Below, piece by piece: positions 953 to 14,000 of a stretch of 64,000 nt of DNA. Numbering within the stretch: position 1 is the first letter of the stretch; each line of letters starts with the position of its first letter. The notes beneath the pieces were generated by a model. It did not search any database. It was not told the DNA's origin and saw nothing but the letters and a program-made list of their open reading frames with translations. Both the position numbers and the translations under genes were made by a program. Location of the stretch: sequence record ON529851.1, one strand, 5' to 3'.

Positions 953-1215
953 CAGGCGGGGTTCGGCGGCGTATACGGCATGGGGCGCAGACGGGGCTCG
1001 GTGCGCGGATGACTGATTCCGGTCGGCATGATGTTCAGTTGCAACCCGGCGCCCCGGCGCAGCAGCATCATGAAGTCATGGGCACGCACAGCCTCGGCCG
1101 GCGAGGCGAATACCAGTTCGATCAGCACGCGATTGCTGTCGGTGCTGCACGCGGTCGCGATCTCGTCAGGCTCCAGGTCCAGAGCCTGCGTGGGACTGAT
1201 GTTGAGCCGGCTCAT
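952..1215 (-). CDS. Hypothetical protein (87 aa, MSRLNISP...)
   Basis: ATGA overlap with the def stop. Confidence 0.65.
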   Translation of the reverse strand: MSRLNISPTQALDLEPDEIATACSTDSNRVLIELVFASPAEAVRAHDFMMLLRRGAGLQLNIMPTGISHPRTEPRLRPMPYTPPNPA

Positions 1216-1754
1216 GCGCGTTTCATCCGACGCACGTTGTCCTGGTGCTTCTTCAGCAGCATCGCCCGCTTCAGCGGCGAGACCCGGTCGATGTTGCGCA
1301 CCCCGTCCAGGTGGTCCATCTCGTGCTGAAGGCAAATGGCCTTGTAGCCCTTGCCGGAGAGGCTCTGCATACGGCCGTGAATGTCCTGGTATTCGACCGT
1401 CACTTCCCGATGCCGTCGCACGGGGAAAAAGACGCCCGGCATGGACAGGCATCCCTCCGGCATCTCGATCATGTCCTCGGACTTGTCGACGAACGTCGGG
1501 TTGATCAGGATCAGTTTGGGACGATCGACCATGGCGTCCTGCACCGGCAGGCCGACATCCGGCAGGTCGATCATGGTGAAGATGCGCAAGGGCACGCCGA
1601 CCTGAACGGCGGCGAGCCCCGCGCCTTCCGCCAGCAACATGGTGTCGACCATGTCGAAGCAGAGCGCCCGCACCTCGTCGGTGATCTCGAAGACCGTATC
1701 AGAGGGCTTCGTCATCCGGGCGTCGGTGCAGGGGATGATCTGGCGCAGCGCCAT
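1212..1754 (-). CDS. def: Peptide deformylase
   Basis: Motifs GAGLAAVQVG, EGCLS and QHEMDHLDG. Confidence 0.95.
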   Translation of the reverse strand: MALRQIIPCTDARMTKPSDTVFEITDEVRALCFDMVDTMLLAEGAGLAAVQVGVPLRIFTMIDLPDVGLPVQDAMVDRPKLILINPTFVDKSEDMIEMPEGCLSMPGVFFPVRRHREVTVEYQDIHGRMQSLSGKGYKAICLQHEMDHLDGVRNIDRVSPLKRAMLLKKHQDNVRRMKRA

Positions 1755-4595: not shown

Positions 4596-4620
4596 GACAG
4601 CCTCCTGCTAGGTTGAGTAC

Positions 4621-4656
4621 CTAGCGGGTGCTGTATTCCAGGTAGAATTTGATCAT
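4621..4656 (-). CDS. Possible uORF MIKFYLEYSTR
   Basis: AGGA SD; its stop sits in a hairpin next to the SD of 4284-4595. Confidence 0.3.
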   Translation of the reverse strand: MIKFYLEYSTR

Positions 4657-4695
4657 GGCCGCATCCTATCTCAAGCGGGGCGGTTCGTCGAGGAA

Positions 4696-4784
4696 TGGCG
4701 GATGGGGCAGGGATCGAACCCGCGTAACCCTCTCGGGTGTCGACCGCTTAGCAAGCGGCTGCCTTACCTCTCGGCCACCCATCC
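4696..4784 (-). tRNA. tRNA-Ser(GCT)
   Basis: Cloverleaf, loop TT-GCT-AA, long variable arm, G73-CCA. Confidence 0.93.
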
Positions 4785-4791
4785 GGGGTGA

Positions 4792-4876
4792 TGGCGGTGC
4801 GCCAGGGAATCGAACCCTCAACCTTGCGGTCGGCGACGGTTTTCAAGGCCGCTTGTCCCCATGGACGCTGCACACC
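4792..4876 (-). tRNA. tRNA-Ser(TGA)
   Basis: Loop CT-TGA-AA, long variable arm, G73-CCA; irregular D arm. Confidence 0.85.
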
Positions 4877-4881
4877 AAAGA

Positions 4882-4972
4882 TGGCGGACGGCACGCGATT
4901 CGAACGCGTGGGACCCAGGGGGTCCGCCTGCTTTCCAAGCAGGTGCCTTAAGCCGGGCTCAGCCAGCCGTCC
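4882..4972 (-). tRNA. tRNA-Ser(GGA)
   Basis: CCTGC-TTGGAAA-GCAGG, long variable arm, CCA. Confidence 0.93.
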
Positions 4973-4977
4973 GGTGT

Positions 4978-5195
4978 TGGTGGAGGCGAGGGGATTCGAA
5001 CCCCCGTAGACGCCGAACCCCCGCATTACCGAGGGCCGATCTCAGGTTTAGAACGCGTGTGCCGTCCTGACCATCTTCCGCAGGCCAGGAGGTCTATCGT
5101 AACGACCCCGTCGATCGGTTGCCTCTGCGTCCCGGATTTACCCGGACCGTTGTTCTGTTCCACGGTGCTCATGCCGAAACCCGAGCGACGCCCCC
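4978..5195 (-). ncRNA. Compact one-piece tmRNA-like RNA (218 nt)
   Basis: GGGGGCG/CGCCTCC-A-CCA acceptor with G3:U70, canonical T arm, no anticodon arm, tmRNA-like 5' end GGGGGCG..GGGTTTCGGC, internal GCA-started frame at 5122-5048. Confidence 0.62.
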
Positions 5196-5205
5196 GTGAA
5201 GGAAA

Positions 5206-5293
5206 TGGAGGATGGTGTGGGATTCGAACCCACGGAACCTTGCGGTCCTCCGGCTTTCGAAACCGGCGCGATCGGCCACTCCGCCAACCATCC
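5206..5293 (-). tRNA. tRNA-Ser(CGA)
   Basis: CCGGT-TTCGAAA-GCCGG, long variable arm, CCA. Confidence 0.92.
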
Positions 5294-5300
5294 AGAACAG

Positions 5301-5489
5301 TCAGGCCGAGGCCGGACTGTAGTTGTCGATGTCGTCGACCCGGATCGCCGTGCCCGCCGCAATCTGGCGGTCGGCGCTCAACAGGTCGGCGACCAGGTCG
5401 TCGGCCGAGACGGCGGTGCCGAGGGTGGCGAACTTCACGTTCACCAGGCGGCCGTCCGCAAACATCTCGTCGATCGCGGCGCGATCCAT
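5301..5489 (-). CDS. Hypothetical protein (62 aa) within the tRNA array
   Basis: ATG with SD AAAGGT; fills the gap between tRNAs. Confidence 0.7.
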   Translation of the reverse strand: MDRAAIDEMFADGRLVNVKFATLGTAVSADDLVADLLSADRQIAAGTAIRVDDIDNYSPASA

Positions 5490-5522
5490 GATAGACCTTT
5501 CTGCCGGACGCGCCGGCGGTGA

Positions 5523-5593
5523 TGGTGGAGACAGTGGGGCTCGAACCCACCAAGGCGTCCTTGCAAAGGATGCCTGCGCCCTGCGCTGTCCCC
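5523..5593 (-). tRNA. tRNA-Ala(TGC), minimal D loop
   Basis: GGGGACA/TGTCTCC with G3:U70, loop TT-TGC-AA. Confidence 0.85.
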
Positions 5594-5630
5594 GTAGGGG
5601 TTGATCGTCAGCCATGCTGACAACCATTGT

Positions 5631-10430: not shown

Positions 10431-11041
10431 CAGAGGAACCGCAGGGAAACGACATGGTGTTGAGGGGTAGGGGACCAGGGAGACACCGTCCGCACCTGCT
10501 CCACGATCATGTTCGACGTCGTCGGCGTGGTCTCGATCGTGTAATGCCCCGGCGCCAACGAGAGATCAAAACCCGGCTCCAACGTGAGGACGCCATTGAT
10601 GGCGAAGGCGTGCGTTACGATCATGACGCCTTTTGCATCGAGAAGGCGGGCCGTCAGCGTGCCCGTCCCGCCTGCGCCGCGCACCCGCATCGCGATCAAC
10701 TGGGCCGGCTCCAGCAGAGTGATCGAAGCGGTCCGCACCACGGAGCCGAACGGGAGCAGGCTCACTTCCAGGGGCGCACATCCGGGCAGAACCCACAGCT
10801 TGCGATCCATGGGTCGGCCGCCGCCGCCGGCCTGTAGCGGCCCGTGCACGACGCCGCCCTCCGTCATCAGGCGGACGTCGTCGCCGCCGAGCGTGCGTTC
10901 GGGCAGCAGGGGCACGTCCATATCGAACGCATCCGTCCCGACGCCCAGGATGCGGGCCGCCGGATCGAGCGTCAGTTCGCCCGGCGCGCGCGGCTGGGGC
11001 GGGTTGGCCTCATAGGGCGTCAGGTAAATGGTGTCAGGCAT
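10430..11041 (-). CDS. Putative fibre/filament subunit (203 aa)
   Basis: TGATG overlap with the giant gene; APGELTLDPAARIL motif. Confidence 0.7.
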   Translation of the reverse strand: MPDTIYLTPYEANPPQPRAPGELTLDPAARILGVGTDAFDMDVPLLPERTLGGDDVRLMTEGGVVHGPLQAGGGGRPMDRKLWVLPGCAPLEVSLLPFGSVVRTASITLLEPAQLIAMRVRGAGGTGTLTARLLDAKGVMIVTHAFAINGVLTLEPGFDLSLAPGHYTIETTPTTSNMIVEQVRTVSPWSPTPQHHVVSLRFL

Positions 11042-14000
11042 CAGGCGGTCGCCCATACATAGGCCACGGCCAACGCCTCTCGGGCGCTTGGCGCGGGCGC
11101 GTCCAGCAGGTTGCCCGTATCGGGCGCGGAAAGGTCACCCACCAACGCCATATCCGAGGCGCGGGATTGCGGGACGCGGCGCGTCGTCAGGACGGGCGCG
11201 ACGCCCGTGACGGCGATCATCGCCGCGTGCCAGCCGGCCGAGAGCGTCACAGCCTGTTCGACCGGCTTAGGTCCGACCGCTCCGGCGGCGGATACCTGGA
11301 CGCTCAGGGCGACATCACCCGGCGTCTGGGTCGCCGGGTCCCATTGACAGACGCCGAACCGGATCGTTCCGGCGGACGCCACGGCGGTGGTGACGCCGAA
11401 GCGACTGAAGCGGGTCTGACGCGGCAGGAAGAACGGTCGGTAGACCACCTTGCCGACCGGCGGCTGGTCCGCCGAAGCGTCCAGGCCGCAGTCCGTCAGG
11501 TAATGATCCCCGGCGCGGGCCGGCAACAGAACAGGCGCGTCGTACACCGGCGCTGGTGAGCGCCACGTTCCATCCGCGTAAAGGATGTCCCCCGGCGCGC
11601 CGCCTTCGGGAGCCACGCCGCCACGCGCGATCCGCCCGAGCGGGCGCGACTGCATCGTACCGCTCTGGTCGGTGGCGAAGAGGAGACCGTCGGTTTCGTT
11701 CAGGGCGATTTCCAGGGGCTCAAGCGCGACGGGCACATTGCCCTGCACCAGAGTGCGTTTATAGCGGATCACCACGCCGCCCGATCCCGAAACGAGCACG
11801 CCGTCTCCGTCTTCGACGTAGCCTTCCGGCGGCTGGAGGTAGAGCGTCGGCAAGGCGCCGGTGGCCGAGGTGCCGCCGGAGCCTTCCGATTCAGGCGGCG
11901 ACACCAGGATGACGGAATCGCTCAGGTCGCCGTCCACGACCGCCGCCGTCAGTTCGGCGGCGAAGCCGCGCGGCGGGTTCACATAGATGCGGTCGAAGTA
12001 GTTGATGCGGACCAAAGCATTCCGGCTAAACGCCGCCTGGGGCGTGCCGACCAGAATGAGACCCAGATCACGCGAAACGCTCGCCGTCACCTCGATCAGC
12101 GGATCGCCGCTCATGCCGACACGGATCGTTGCGAAAGGCCCGCCCGCCTGCCCGTTACTGACGATGGCGTTCGCCGCGCCCGTCGCGTCACCCACGGCGA
12201 ACGCGATCGAGATGTCGTTGTCGAACGGCGCCGTCGTATAGGTGACCGGCAGTTCGCCCAGACCATCGAGCGTGGTGATCTGAATCGGTCCGCCGAAATC
12301 AACGGAGGCCGTTTCATTCGGTCCGCGCAGTTCGCCTTGCGGCGCTTCGGTCCGCACGATCCAGATGAATTGTTGTCCCGGCGTCGGTTTCCAGCCGGCG
12401 CTGCCCTCGGCGAACCCGTCCGGCGGGGTGAGGGAGATGATGCTGTCGATCTCTCCCACCCACATATCAGCGACGCCCATGTCGCCTGCGATCGGCGAGA
12501 GGCTGATTTCCAGCGGATCGAACAGTTCGAATCCGGCGCCAAGGATGTAGTTCATCGGCTGGAGCGTGACCGCCAGGGTCTCCTCCAACTTGATATTGGC
12601 CCCGGCCTCCAGGTCCACGGTCGGCGGGAAGGGGTAGTAGAGGTCCTCGCCCAAGCCCGTCACGACGACGGCGTCCGTCTGCGGCTGGCCGCCCAGGTCG
12701 CCGGAGACGTAGATGGTGGGCAGGTAGGCGCCGATGCCGCCCTGAGCGGTGGCCTGCGGGTCCATCATGAGGATGGTTTCGCCCAGGTCCCCCGAGCCTT
12801 GAGCGCCCATGGAGATGGCGCCCACAGGGGGAACCACAGTGACTACAGGCAGAGAACCTGAGGCGTTCGCAGCTTTCGAGCCCTCGCCGGCGCCGACCGT
12901 CGAGGTCACCTGGACCGTGCCGATGGACGTGATATTGACCAGCGCCGGAATCGACAGGCCGCCCTCGAAGACCGACAGGGCCGCCAGGCCAGGTCCGCCC
13001 GCAAACGCCGGTTCCACGAAGAAGTTGGGCGTGCCGCCCACGGCGGTGCCCGGCAGATAGGAAGGATGGTCGGTCCCCGCCGGCGTGCCCGTGGTCGACG
13101 TCTGCGTGACGCCGTCCGTCAGCAGTTCCCCGAGGAAGGCCGAGCCGCCGCCGGCCGCTCCGGACGCCGTGCCATTGTTGCCTGCCGCGCCGCCGCCGCC
13201 ATAATAGCCGCCGCCGCCGCCCGCCCCGGAGGCGACGCCGCCTGAGCCGCCCGCACCGCCTTCGCTGGCTTCCAGCGGGAAACCGTCGCCGCCGCGCAGA
13301 TAGGCGCCGTTGCCGTTGCCGCCGGTGTTGGTCGCGCCGACGCCGCCTGCGGTCTGGCTGCCCCCGGCGCCCGCGTACACGGTGCCGCCGAGGCCGGCGC
13401 CGCCGCTCAGGCCGCCGCCGAAGCCGCCGGGACGGGCCGCTACGCCCGCGCCGCCGCCGCCGCCGCCCGCAATCGCCACCAGCACGCCGTTGCGCCAGAC
13501 ACGGGTCGAGCCGCCGCCGGCCCCCATGGCGTAGCTGCCCGCCCCGCCGCCGCCGCCGTCAGGCCAGCCGCCGTAAGCGCCCATGAAGTCCCTGGGCGTT
13601 GCGCCGCCCTGGCCCACTTCGAACCGCAGGTGGTCGCCAGACTGGAACAGGACGACACCGGACAGCAGGCCGCCAGCGCCGCCCAGCGAGGTGCGGGCGA
13701 TCGTATTGTTGACGAGTTGCGAGGCCGAACCGCCGCCGCCCCACAAGGTGAGATTGACGCCCCCCTCGAAGGTCGTGATGTAGTCACGAGAGCCTTGGCG
13801 GTCTCCCGGCAGGAGGGTCTCGCCGAGCGTCAGCGGGGCCAGAGCCGCGCCGGGCGCGAACTCCATAACTGCGCGGCCGTCACCGCCTGGAAGGATGGTG
13901 GCCTTCAGCGCCTGCGCGCCGCCAACGCCCACACCGGCGACGTAGTCGACGTCGTTTTGACGCGGGGGGTTGCGCCCCGCGCCGCTTTCAAGGCGGTGAT

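What the first reader, a model, noticed from the sequence alone, without database searches (positions are those of the whole stretch)
4978..5195. Compact one-piece tmRNA-like gene with a non-canonical tag
Seen: a tRNA-Ala-like domain (G3:U70, A73, CCA, canonical T arm) without an anticodon arm, spanning only 218 nt. After a hairpin there is a frame GCA-ACC-GAT... reading ATDRRGRYDRPPGLRKMVRTAHAF-stop (5122-5048). Established: alphaproteobacterial host tmRNA is two-piece (permuted), and its tags end in AA for ClpXP recognition. Typical one-piece tmRNAs are considerably longer. Inference: this phage tmRNA is unpermuted, minimal, and would add a basic tag without the AA degron, possibly rescuing ribosomes without destroying the product. 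The resume codon is a guess.
Basis: partly seen in the sequence, partly recalled or inferred. Interest (0 to 1): 0.75.

Follow-up and report, generated by a model that had tools for sequence, protein, structure and literature searches.

The report
Alanine tRNA-like RNA with giant arm
A jumbo Brevundimonas phage carries, inside its tRNA gene array, a conserved 218-base RNA that looks like an alanine tRNA whose variable arm has grown into a 137-base folded domain; it is a real, undescribed RNA family, but the proposed 24-residue "tag" message is not supported, and the phage has an ordinary two-piece tmRNA elsewhere.

Summary
The window is Brevundimonas phage vB_BpoS-Marchewka (ON529851.1). It fills the gap between two tRNA-Ser genes.

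It is not a compact tmRNA. Homologues occur in five lineages: seven Brevundimonas jumbo phages, 543-kb and 608-kb viral contigs, and two metagenome fragments. Across them, 21 of 59 base pairs show compensatory changes.

The fold is a full cloverleaf. It has a D arm, a hairpin at the anticodon-arm position (11-12-nt loop, no anticodon) and a T arm. A 137-nt branched domain sits at the variable-arm position.

The frame to the UAA is lost in two lineages. Substitutions show no codon-position bias, and the "ORF" is the least conserved part of the RNA.

ARAGORN finds nothing, and Rfam's tmRNA model scores 28-32 bits (cut-off 47). The same phage has an unannotated canonical permuted tmRNA elsewhere, with tag AHNDNFAAGERVLLAA.

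Best reading: a new tRNA-Ala-like, probably alanylated, non-decoding RNA. Its function is inferred, not shown.

The parts
4978..5195 (-). Whole RNA gene, 218 nt (RNA position p = 5196 - window coordinate)
   Evidence: Fills the gap between two tRNA-Ser genes. Scores 266.8 bits on model R1. Conserved in 7 phages and in lineages B, C, D and E.
5189..5195 (-). Acceptor stem, 5' strand GGGGGCG (pos 1-7); G3 at 5193
   Evidence: 7/7 pairs. Invariant in all 8 aligned sequences.
4978..4988 (-). Acceptor stem 3' strand CGCCUCC (pos 208-214; U212 = U70 equivalent at 4984), discriminator A215 (4981), CCA (4978-4980)
   Evidence: The 3' end is invariant, also in the cut copy L010.
5167..5186 (-). D arm: stem GCUC/GAGC (pos 10-13/26-29) with an 11-12-nt loop holding invariant UCGGCA
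   Evidence: Two compensatory pairs in lineage C (GCCU/AGGC). 100% of cells paired. Same stem sequence as in the phages' tRNA-Ala.
5146..5166 (-). Hairpin A at the anticodon-arm position (pos 30-34/46-50). The 11-12-nt loop has an invariant (G/A)GAACAG 5' half and a hypervariable 3' half.
   Evidence: U-A changes to G-C in lineage D. Loop positions 42-44 vary even among the seven close phages.
5132..5145 (-). Hairpin B (pos 51-54/61-64) with a GUAA-type loop
   Evidence: G-C changes to A-U in lineage D and C-G to U-G in lineage C.
5123..5131 (-). Helix Px 5' strand (pos 65-73), base of the giant variable-arm domain
   Evidence: Pairs with 5009-5017. The sequence is entirely different but still paired in lineage D (CAGCUAGU/GCUGGCUG). 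3+1 compensatory pairs.
5119..5122 (-).
   Evidence: Single-stranded link between Px and Py. Reads UAAA in lineage D and GAAA in soil variant X7 (5121 G>T).
5113..5118 (-). Helix Py 5' strand CCGAUC (pos 78-83)
   Evidence: Pairs with 5036-5041. 4 of 6 pairs have compensatory changes.
5091..5109 (-). GG + hairpin E (pos 87-105), with a loop UUACGAU that resembles a T loop
   Evidence: Stem kept in M, B and C, weak in D. This stretch is what Rfam's tmRNA model mistook for a 5' end.
5065..5090 (-). Hairpin C (pos 106-113/124-131)
   Evidence: 5 of 8 pairs have compensatory changes. U-A changes to C-G even within the close phages.
5045..5054 (-). Invariant single strand GUUCUAAACC (pos 142-151). 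GUUCU can pair with the loop of hairpin A.
   Evidence: Invariant in all lineages. The pseudoknot GGAAC/GUUCU is 100% paired, with one G.U to A-U change and no compensatory change.
5036..5041 (-). Helix Py 3' strand GAUCGG (pos 155-160)
5018..5035 (-). Hairpin D (pos 161-166/173-178) with invariant loop GUAAUG
   Evidence: 3 of 6 pairs compensatory, including changes among the close phages.
5009..5017 (-). Helix Px 3' strand (pos 179-187)
4989..5008 (-). Linker UAC (pos 188-190) and T arm GGGGG/UUCGAAU/CCCCU (pos 191-207)
   Evidence: G-C changes to C-G in lineage D. The T loop is invariant.

Best explanation
This is a real gene for a roughly 215-nt structured RNA of a previously undescribed family, found in the tRNA arrays of very large phages.

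Shown:
- The RNA folds as a tRNA-Ala-like cloverleaf.
- The acceptor stem is invariant and carries the alanine identity set: G1-C72, G2-C71, G3:U70, G4-C69, A73, with CCA encoded.
- It has a D arm and a hairpin where the anticodon arm should be. That hairpin has an 11-12-nt loop and no anticodon.
- It has a canonical T arm.
- A 137-nt branched domain sits in place of the variable arm. The domain has two long-range helices, four hairpins and two GUAA-type loops.

Inferred:
- The RNA is transcribed with its tRNA neighbours.
- RNase P and 3' trimming release it.
- Host AlaRS charges it with alanine.
- It acts on the translation machinery as a non-decoding alanyl-RNA. This makes it functionally tmRNA-like (ribosome rescue, or competition for its factors) beside the phage's canonical two-piece tmRNA.
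- If it carries any message, that message is no longer than the invariant UUC-UAA.
For: Gene and family:
- Exact fit between two tRNAs on the same strand in every lineage.
- 95-100% identity in 7 phages.
- Homologues in L015, L009, L017 and L010.
- Model R1 separates family members (172-269 bits) from tRNAs (35 bits or less), with one copy per locus.

Structure:
- 94.9% of cells are paired.
- 21 of 59 pairs have changes on both sides.
- 0 of 500 shuffles reach this, and the slid controls give only 1-5 such pairs.

tRNA-Ala affinity:
- The D stem GCUC/GAGC followed by A-CC is the same as in the phages' tRNA-Ala.
- tRNA-Ala is the best non-family hit of R1.

Alanylation probably matters:
- All 7 acceptor pairs, A73 and CCA are invariant across lineages in which other helices were rewritten.
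- The tRNA-Ala genes of the same phages differ in their acceptor stems.

No conserved tag.

Canonical tmRNA in the same genome.
Against: - There is no expression, end-mapping or charging data. The only RNA-library hits were contigs that may be DNA.
- The invariance of the acceptor stem could reflect a partner other than AlaRS.
- A hairpin in the anticodon-arm position would occupy the place SmpB takes on a tmRNA, so classical SmpB-dependent trans-translation is doubtful.
- A phage that already has a tmRNA has no obvious need for a second rescue RNA.
- The MFE z-score of the single sequence is unremarkable (-1.67).
- The family has only 4 full lineages, so several helices rest on one or two events.
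Confidence: 0.55

Rival explanations
1. One reading: a minimal one-piece tmRNA that resumes at GCA (5120-5122) and tags stalled chains with ATDRRGRYDRPPGLRKMVRTAHAF.
For: - An alanine tRNA-like end.
- The frame is open and kept in lineage B, where indels sum to 3 nt.
- Within the seven close phages, the three substitutions in the frame are two synonymous changes and one T>A.
- Rfam's tmRNA model is the only family hit.
Against: - GCA is not conserved: it is AAA/UAAA in lineage D and GAA in X7.
- The frame is lost in C and D.
- There is no codon-position bias, and all frames score alike.
- The ORF is the least conserved stretch, and 32 of its 72 nt lie in covarying helices.
- Stop codons are rare at 63% G+C, so an open frame carries no weight.
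- No PK1 was found.
- ARAGORN and Rfam are below threshold.
- The phage has a canonical tmRNA.
Confidence: 0.07
2. A tRNA-scaffolded RNA. The tRNA-like module only provides RNase P/CCA processing and stability. The function lies in the 137-nt domain (protein or ligand binding, or an RNA machine) and has nothing to do with aminoacylation or ribosomes.
For: - The variable-arm domain is elaborate, with invariant loops (GUAAUG, GUAA-type, GUUCUAAACC) and covarying helices.
- Phage tRNA arrays also host other ornate RNAs. GOLLD lies next to or around tRNAs in L008 and L015.
Against: Processing alone does not require G3:U70, A73 or an invariant 7-bp stem. Yet these are the most conserved part of the RNA, while other helices drift.
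Confidence: 0.22
3. A decoy. An alanine tRNA/TLD mimic titrates a host factor (SmpB, AlaRS, EF-Tu) or a host defence nuclease or toxin aimed at tRNA-Ala or tmRNA acceptor stems.
For: - Precedent: mycobacteriophage DS6A carries little more than a tmRNA TLD, and TLD-only molecules strongly inhibit tmRNA (PMC4131195).
- The acceptor/T module is invariant.
- No phage SmpB was found.
Against: - The phage itself encodes a canonical tmRNA that needs SmpB, so titrating SmpB would be self-defeating.
- A decoy does not need a conserved 137-nt domain.
Confidence: 0.12
4. A decaying tRNA-Ala or tmRNA pseudogene with an insertion and no function.
For: Standard finders do not recognise it. The record does not annotate it.
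Against: It is conserved with compensatory changes in phages that differ greatly elsewhere. It is more conserved than its surroundings: 95% against 89.8% for Gurke.
Confidence: 0.02

Closest known systems
tmRNA (one-piece, Rfam RF00023)
   Same: An alanine-identity tRNA-like end (G3:U70, A73, CCA, T arm). No decoding anticodon. A large structured insert. Phage-encoded examples exist.
   Different: tmRNA has no D stem, and its body leaves the core where the anticodon stem would be (helix P2). It has PK1, a resume codon and a conserved tag frame. Here a D arm and an anticodon-position hairpin are present. The body leaves at the variable-arm position, and no conserved frame exists. Score is 28-32 bits against GA 47.
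Permuted (two-piece) tmRNA of Caulobacter/Brevundimonas phages (RF04321), e.g. CcrMagneto L008:1468-1787 and Marchewka L020:1490-1747
   Same: Same phage subfamily. The Magneto tmRNA has the identical acceptor stem GGGGGCG/CGCCUCC-ACCA and a near-identical T arm.
   Different: Those are permuted, 260-320 nt in the gene, with tags ending AA: VADNDNDVVAFASAREAIAA and AHNDNFAAGERVLLAA. There is no significant similarity outside the tRNA-like end. The element scores only 14.6 bits on RF04321.
tRNA-Ala / class II tRNAs with long variable arms
   Same: Cloverleaf order of arms. The D stem GCUC/GAGC-A-CC is as in tRNA-Ala. Alanine identity elements. An extra arm between the anticodon stem and the T stem.
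   Different: The anticodon loop is 11-12 nt with no anticodon and no U33. The variable region is 137 nt and branched; natural ones are about 4-25 nt (my own knowledge). Neither ARAGORN nor RF00005 calls it.
TLD-only tmRNA of mycobacteriophage DS6A (tmRNA Website tmID 11587; PMC4131195)
   Same: A phage-encoded alanine tRNA-like domain without a credible tag.
   Different: DS6A is described as 'little more than the TLD'. This RNA carries a large conserved domain and full D and anticodon-position arms.
Stable RNAs of unknown function in the phage T4 tRNA cluster (species 1 and 2 RNAs; recalled from memory, not checked here)
   Same: Small stable RNAs co-transcribed and processed with phage tRNAs.
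   Different: No sequence or structure comparison was made, and no alanine identity is known to me.

Membership tests
tmRNA (RF00023) | tRNA-like domain: 7-bp acceptor stem with G3:U70, A73, 3' CCA, canonical T arm | tested here: met
   all present and invariant.
tmRNA (RF00023) | No D stem. Helix P2 replaces the anticodon stem and carries the rest of the molecule. | tested here: not met
   The D stem and the anticodon-position hairpin both have compensatory changes. The big domain (helix Px) starts after that hairpin, at the variable-arm position.
tmRNA (RF00023) | Resume codon and tag reading frame ending in a stop, conserved among relatives (usually ...AA) | tested here: not met
   GCA is not conserved. 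The frame is lost in 2 of 3 other lineages. No codon-position bias, and the stretch is the least conserved.
tmRNA (RF00023) | Pseudoknot PK1 upstream of the resume codon | tested here: not met
   The stretch before GCA is the Px helix. The only candidate pseudoknot (loop A with GUUCU) covers the stop codon, not the resume region.
tmRNA (RF00023) | Recognised by the curated model or by ARAGORN | tested here: not met
   28.4-31.9 bits against GA 47. ARAGORN finds none even at -ps70.
tmRNA (RF00023) | Binds SmpB, is alanylated, performs trans-translation | not testable with these tools
   No SmpB gene in these phages by tblastn. Biochemistry is needed.
Permuted tmRNA (RF04321) | Acceptor piece upstream of coding piece; score at or above 47 bits | tested here: not met
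   14.6 bits for the element. By contrast, L020:1490-1747 of the same phage scores 57.2 bits.
tRNA (RF00005) | Acceptor, D and T arms in cloverleaf order | tested here: met
tRNA (RF00005) | 5-bp anticodon stem with a 7-nt loop, U33 and an anticodon | tested here: not met
   The loop is 11-12 nt, GGAACAG plus variable bases.
tRNA (RF00005) | Short or single-hairpin variable region; recognised by RF00005 or ARAGORN | tested here: not met
   A 137-nt branched region. No RF00005 or ARAGORN call at 4978-5195.
TLD-only phage tmRNA (DS6A type) | [quoted passage not shown] | tested here: not met
   A conserved 137-nt domain is present. The DS6A description comes from PMC4131195; its sequence was not compared.

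The most novel reading that the evidence does not exclude
A self-decoding, tag-less rescue RNA. The invariant GAA in the loop of the anticodon-position hairpin pairs in cis with the invariant UUC of GUUCUAAACC, forming a built-in codon-anticodon helix. This would let the alanyl-RNA enter an empty A site without SmpB. After transfer of a single alanine and translocation, the invariant UAA that follows UUC is read by a release factor. The stalled ribosome is freed and the protein receives one alanine and no degron. In this model the pairing sets the frame, not the distance from an upstream signal. That would explain why no upstream frame is conserved.
Probability: 0.08. Interest if true: 0.9.

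Novelty: new variant of a known kind. Interest (0 to 1): 0.6.

Why it matters
tmRNA is the only known RNA that combines an alanine tRNA-like end with a large non-tRNA body. This family would be a second, differently built solution. It keeps the whole cloverleaf and hangs a folded 137-nt domain on the variable-arm position. It coexists with a normal tmRNA in the same phage genomes.

If the RNA is alanylated and meets the ribosome, it offers a natural experiment on two questions. One is how much of tmRNA/SmpB is needed to enter an empty A site. The other is why very large phages invest in translation-rescue RNAs.

There is also a practical point. ARAGORN missed both this RNA and the canonical permuted tmRNA of these phages, although the genome paper reports that no tmRNA was detected (PMC10070969).

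Tried and rejected
- ARAGORN in tmRNA mode at default and relaxed thresholds found nothing. At -ps80/-ps70 it gave one spurious permuted call stitched from neighbouring tRNAs.
- Rfam's alternative 5' end at 5109 (GGGGUCG) was rejected. It has a U.C mismatch, it is not conserved as an acceptor complement in B, C and D, and Rfam itself picks the full-length ends in C and D.
- Alternative pairing of CCGUGGA with UCUACGG (a tmRNA-like P2a) is invariant in M, B and C. It is broken in D and clashes with Px and the T stem, which covary.
- Sequence similarity of the inner 183 nt to the canonical tmRNAs of Marchewka and Magneto is not above shuffles: 68/300 and 288/300 shuffles score as high.
- I looked for a conserved reading frame anchored on any landmark (junction, hairpin E, hairpin C, the three invariant UAAs). 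None is kept in all lineages.
- Pattern scans returned chance matches in L011-L013, L018, L019 and L021-L031.
- No family member was found in 185,579 bacterial species genomes with the family pattern. The exact 3' 28-mer also found none.
- No protein gene is shared next to the RNA across lineages, apart from a metallophosphatase shared by M and B.
- tblastn with E. coli SmpB found no hit in Brevundimonas or Caulobacter phages.
- Public runs gave only contigs from related phages in soil and wastewater. There is no evidence on transcription or RNA ends.

Full report
**Origin of the window.** The stretch 4600-5600 is 100% identical to Brevundimonas phage vB_BpoS-Marchewka (ON529851.1, 348 kb, Dolichocephalovirinae) at the same coordinates. 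The record annotates tRNAs on both sides of the finding and nothing at 4978-5195. The genome paper states that ARAGORN detected no tmRNA in these phages (PMC10070969).

**The observation.**
- Read on the minus strand, the 218 nt start with GGGGGCG and end with CGCCUCC-A-CCA.
- The two ends pair over 7 bp with a G.U at the third pair. A GGGGG/UUCGAAU/CCCCU T arm precedes the 3' strand.
- The unit begins 10 nt after the CCA of tRNA-Ser(cga) and ends 5 nt before tRNA-Ser(gga). These spacings are normal for this array.
- ARAGORN calls no tmRNA, even at relaxed thresholds.
- Rfam's tmRNA model gives 31.9 bits (gathering score 47). It matches only the tRNA-like end, with an inferior internal 5' end.
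- An ordinary tRNA-Leu reaches 26.5 bits on that model, so this score shows tRNA-likeness and nothing more.

**Relatives.**
- Seven Brevundimonas jumbo phages (312-357 kb) carry the element at 95-100% identity. The surrounding kilobase is 89.5-100% identical.
- Pattern scans of public contigs found diverged copies:
  - L009, a 543-kb viral contig.
  - L015, a metagenome contig.
  - L017, a 608-kb viral contig.
  - L010, a copy cut by a contig end.
- All lie in tRNA arrays on the strand of the tRNAs.
- Reads or contigs from soil and wastewater metagenomes hold further variants.
- No bacterial genome matched.
- Covariance model R1, built from the alignment, scores members 172-269 bits and tRNAs at most 35 bits. 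It finds one copy per locus.

**Structure.** On the model-guided alignment:
- 94.9% of cells are paired.
- 21 of 59 pairs show changes on both sides.
- No shuffle of 500 reaches this, and sliding the partners leaves only 1-5 such pairs.

The alignment is fitted to the model and the lineages are few. The key events are nevertheless visible in the raw sequences:
- D stem: GCUC/GAGC becomes GCCU/AGGC in L009.
- Hairpin A: U-A becomes G-C in L017.
- Hairpin B: G-C becomes A-U in L017.
- Px: GACGC.GAG/UUC.GCGUC becomes CAGCUAGU/GCUGGCUG in L017.
- Py: CCGAUC/GAUCGG becomes CGGUUG/CAGCCG in L015 and UGGAU/GUCCA in L009.
- T stem: G-C becomes C-G in L017.

The order of elements is:
1. Acceptor stem, 5' strand.
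2. D arm.
3. Hairpin A, at the anticodon-arm position.
4. A 137-nt region. It comprises hairpin B; helix Px; the junction strand GCAA; helix Py enclosing hairpins E and C and the invariant strand GUUCUAAACC; and hairpin D.
5. The 3-nt linker UAC.
6. T arm.
7. Acceptor stem, 3' strand.

This is a cloverleaf with a giant branched variable arm. It is not the tmRNA plan. The D stem and the following A-CC are those of the phages' own tRNA-Ala, and tRNA-Ala is the best non-family hit of R1. The loop of hairpin A can pair with GUUCU. That pairing is 100% kept, with one G.U to A-U change, but it lacks compensatory support.

**The proposed message.**
- GCA lies in the four-base junction strand between Px and Py. 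It is AAA (context UAAA) in L017 and GAA in a soil variant (5121 G>T).
- From that triplet, the frame reaches the UAA of GUUCUAAACC in the Marchewka group and in L015.
- In L009 a 1-nt length difference sends the frame past that stop to the UAA in the loop of hairpin D. L017 also ends there.
- Differences from the other lineages fall evenly on the three codon positions. The three frames give equal peptide similarity.
- The ORF stretch is the least conserved part of the RNA.
- 32 of its 72 bases are in helices supported by covariation.
- The only hint for coding is that the three substitutions among the seven close phages are two synonymous changes and one T>A. Two of these sites also form the covarying closing pair of hairpin C.
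- At 63% G+C an open frame of 24 codons is expected by chance about half the time (my own estimate).

I conclude that the tag is not supported as a family feature.

**A canonical tmRNA in the same phage.** The phiCbK-like relatives have an unannotated permuted tmRNA. In CcrMagneto, ARAGORN reads the tag VADNDNDVVAFASAREAIAA and RF04321 scores 70.3 bits. Searching with it showed a second locus in all seven Brevundimonas jumbo phages. In Marchewka this lies at about 275.6-275.95 kb, outside the window. There RF04321 scores 57.2 bits (GA 47). The frame reads AHNDNFAAGERVLLAA-stop, a normal alphaproteobacterial tag. ARAGORN misses it. So the 218-nt RNA is an additional RNA, not the phage's version of tmRNA. 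Its acceptor stem equals that of the Magneto tmRNA (GGGGGCG/CGCCUCC) and differs from Marchewka's own tmRNA (GGGGCCG/CGGCUCC). Outside the tRNA-like end there is no significant similarity to either tmRNA. No SmpB gene was found in these phages.

**Mechanism.** What is shown is a conserved, highly structured tRNA-Ala-like RNA gene. The rest is inferred. Co-transcription and RNase P/3' processing follow from its place and spacing in the array. Alanylation is suggested by two facts:
- The whole alanine identity set and the complete acceptor stem are invariant, while other helices were rewritten.
- The tRNA-Ala genes of the same phages vary in that stem.

Because it has no anticodon, a charged RNA of this kind can only act in a tmRNA-like way or as a competitor. 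The alternative is that the tRNA part is merely a processing handle for the large domain. I favour an aminoacylation-dependent, translation-linked role, with moderate confidence. I list the scaffold and decoy readings as rivals. The DS6A TLD-only precedent and the inhibitory effect of TLD-only molecules are from PMC4131195.

The most novel reading not excluded is a cis codon-anticodon mimic: GAA pairs with UUC, followed by the invariant UAA. This would give rescue with one added alanine and no tag.

**Verdict.** The tmRNA-with-basic-tag interpretation is mostly wrong. What remains is a new, well-supported RNA family of unknown function that deserves experimental follow-up.

Noticed in passing
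Outside the window: ON529851.1 about 275,600-275,950 (-), = L020:1490-1747(+): Unannotated canonical permuted (two-piece) tmRNA of Marchewka. RF04321 scores 57.2 bits, and the tag frame reads AHNDNFAAGERVLLAA*. ARAGORN misses it, and the genome paper reports no tmRNA. All seven related phages have the locus.
   Followed up: partly
window 4795-4877 (-): A tRNA-like gene between two tRNA-Ser genes that ARAGORN does not call here. The record skips locus tag MARCHEWKA_00150. Rfam gives tRNA-Sec 30.6 bits (below threshold). The homologous stretch is annotated tRNA-Ser in Domovoi (L002:1693-1777). It is probably a tRNA-Ser(UGA) with a long variable arm.
   Followed up: partly
L008:473-959 (-) and L015:6814-7279 (+): GOLLD RNA (169.4 bits, and 143.1 bits just under GA 150) lies in the tRNA arrays. 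In each case it encloses a tRNA gene: tRNA-Lys in CcrMagneto and tRNA-Gly in L015. It sits close to the tmRNA or to the new RNA.
   Followed up: no
window 5523-5593 (-): The tRNA-Ala(tgc) of the Marchewka group is only 71 nt, with a shrunken D region (ARAGORN puts the anticodon at position 29). Gurke and Kikimora have a normal 76-nt tRNA-Ala at the same place.
   Followed up: no
window 5015-5023 and 4997-5005 (-): GGGGGUUCG occurs twice, 9 nt apart: once at the 3' side of hairpin D plus linker, and once at the 5' half of the T arm. The upstream copy can pair with the 3' half of the T arm, which is why the single-sequence MFE fold destroys the T arm. The exact repeat is seen in the Marchewka group; L015 keeps only GGUUCG there.
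   Followed up: partly
window 1212-1754 (-): The record annotates a peptide deformylase gene 3 kb from the tRNA array. This is another translation-related gene of the phage.
   Followed up: no
window 4785-4858, run X18: Very high contig depth (about 11,000-14,000) over the tRNA-like gene in a wastewater RNA library. It most likely comes from similar tRNAs of other organisms, not from this phage.
   Followed up: no
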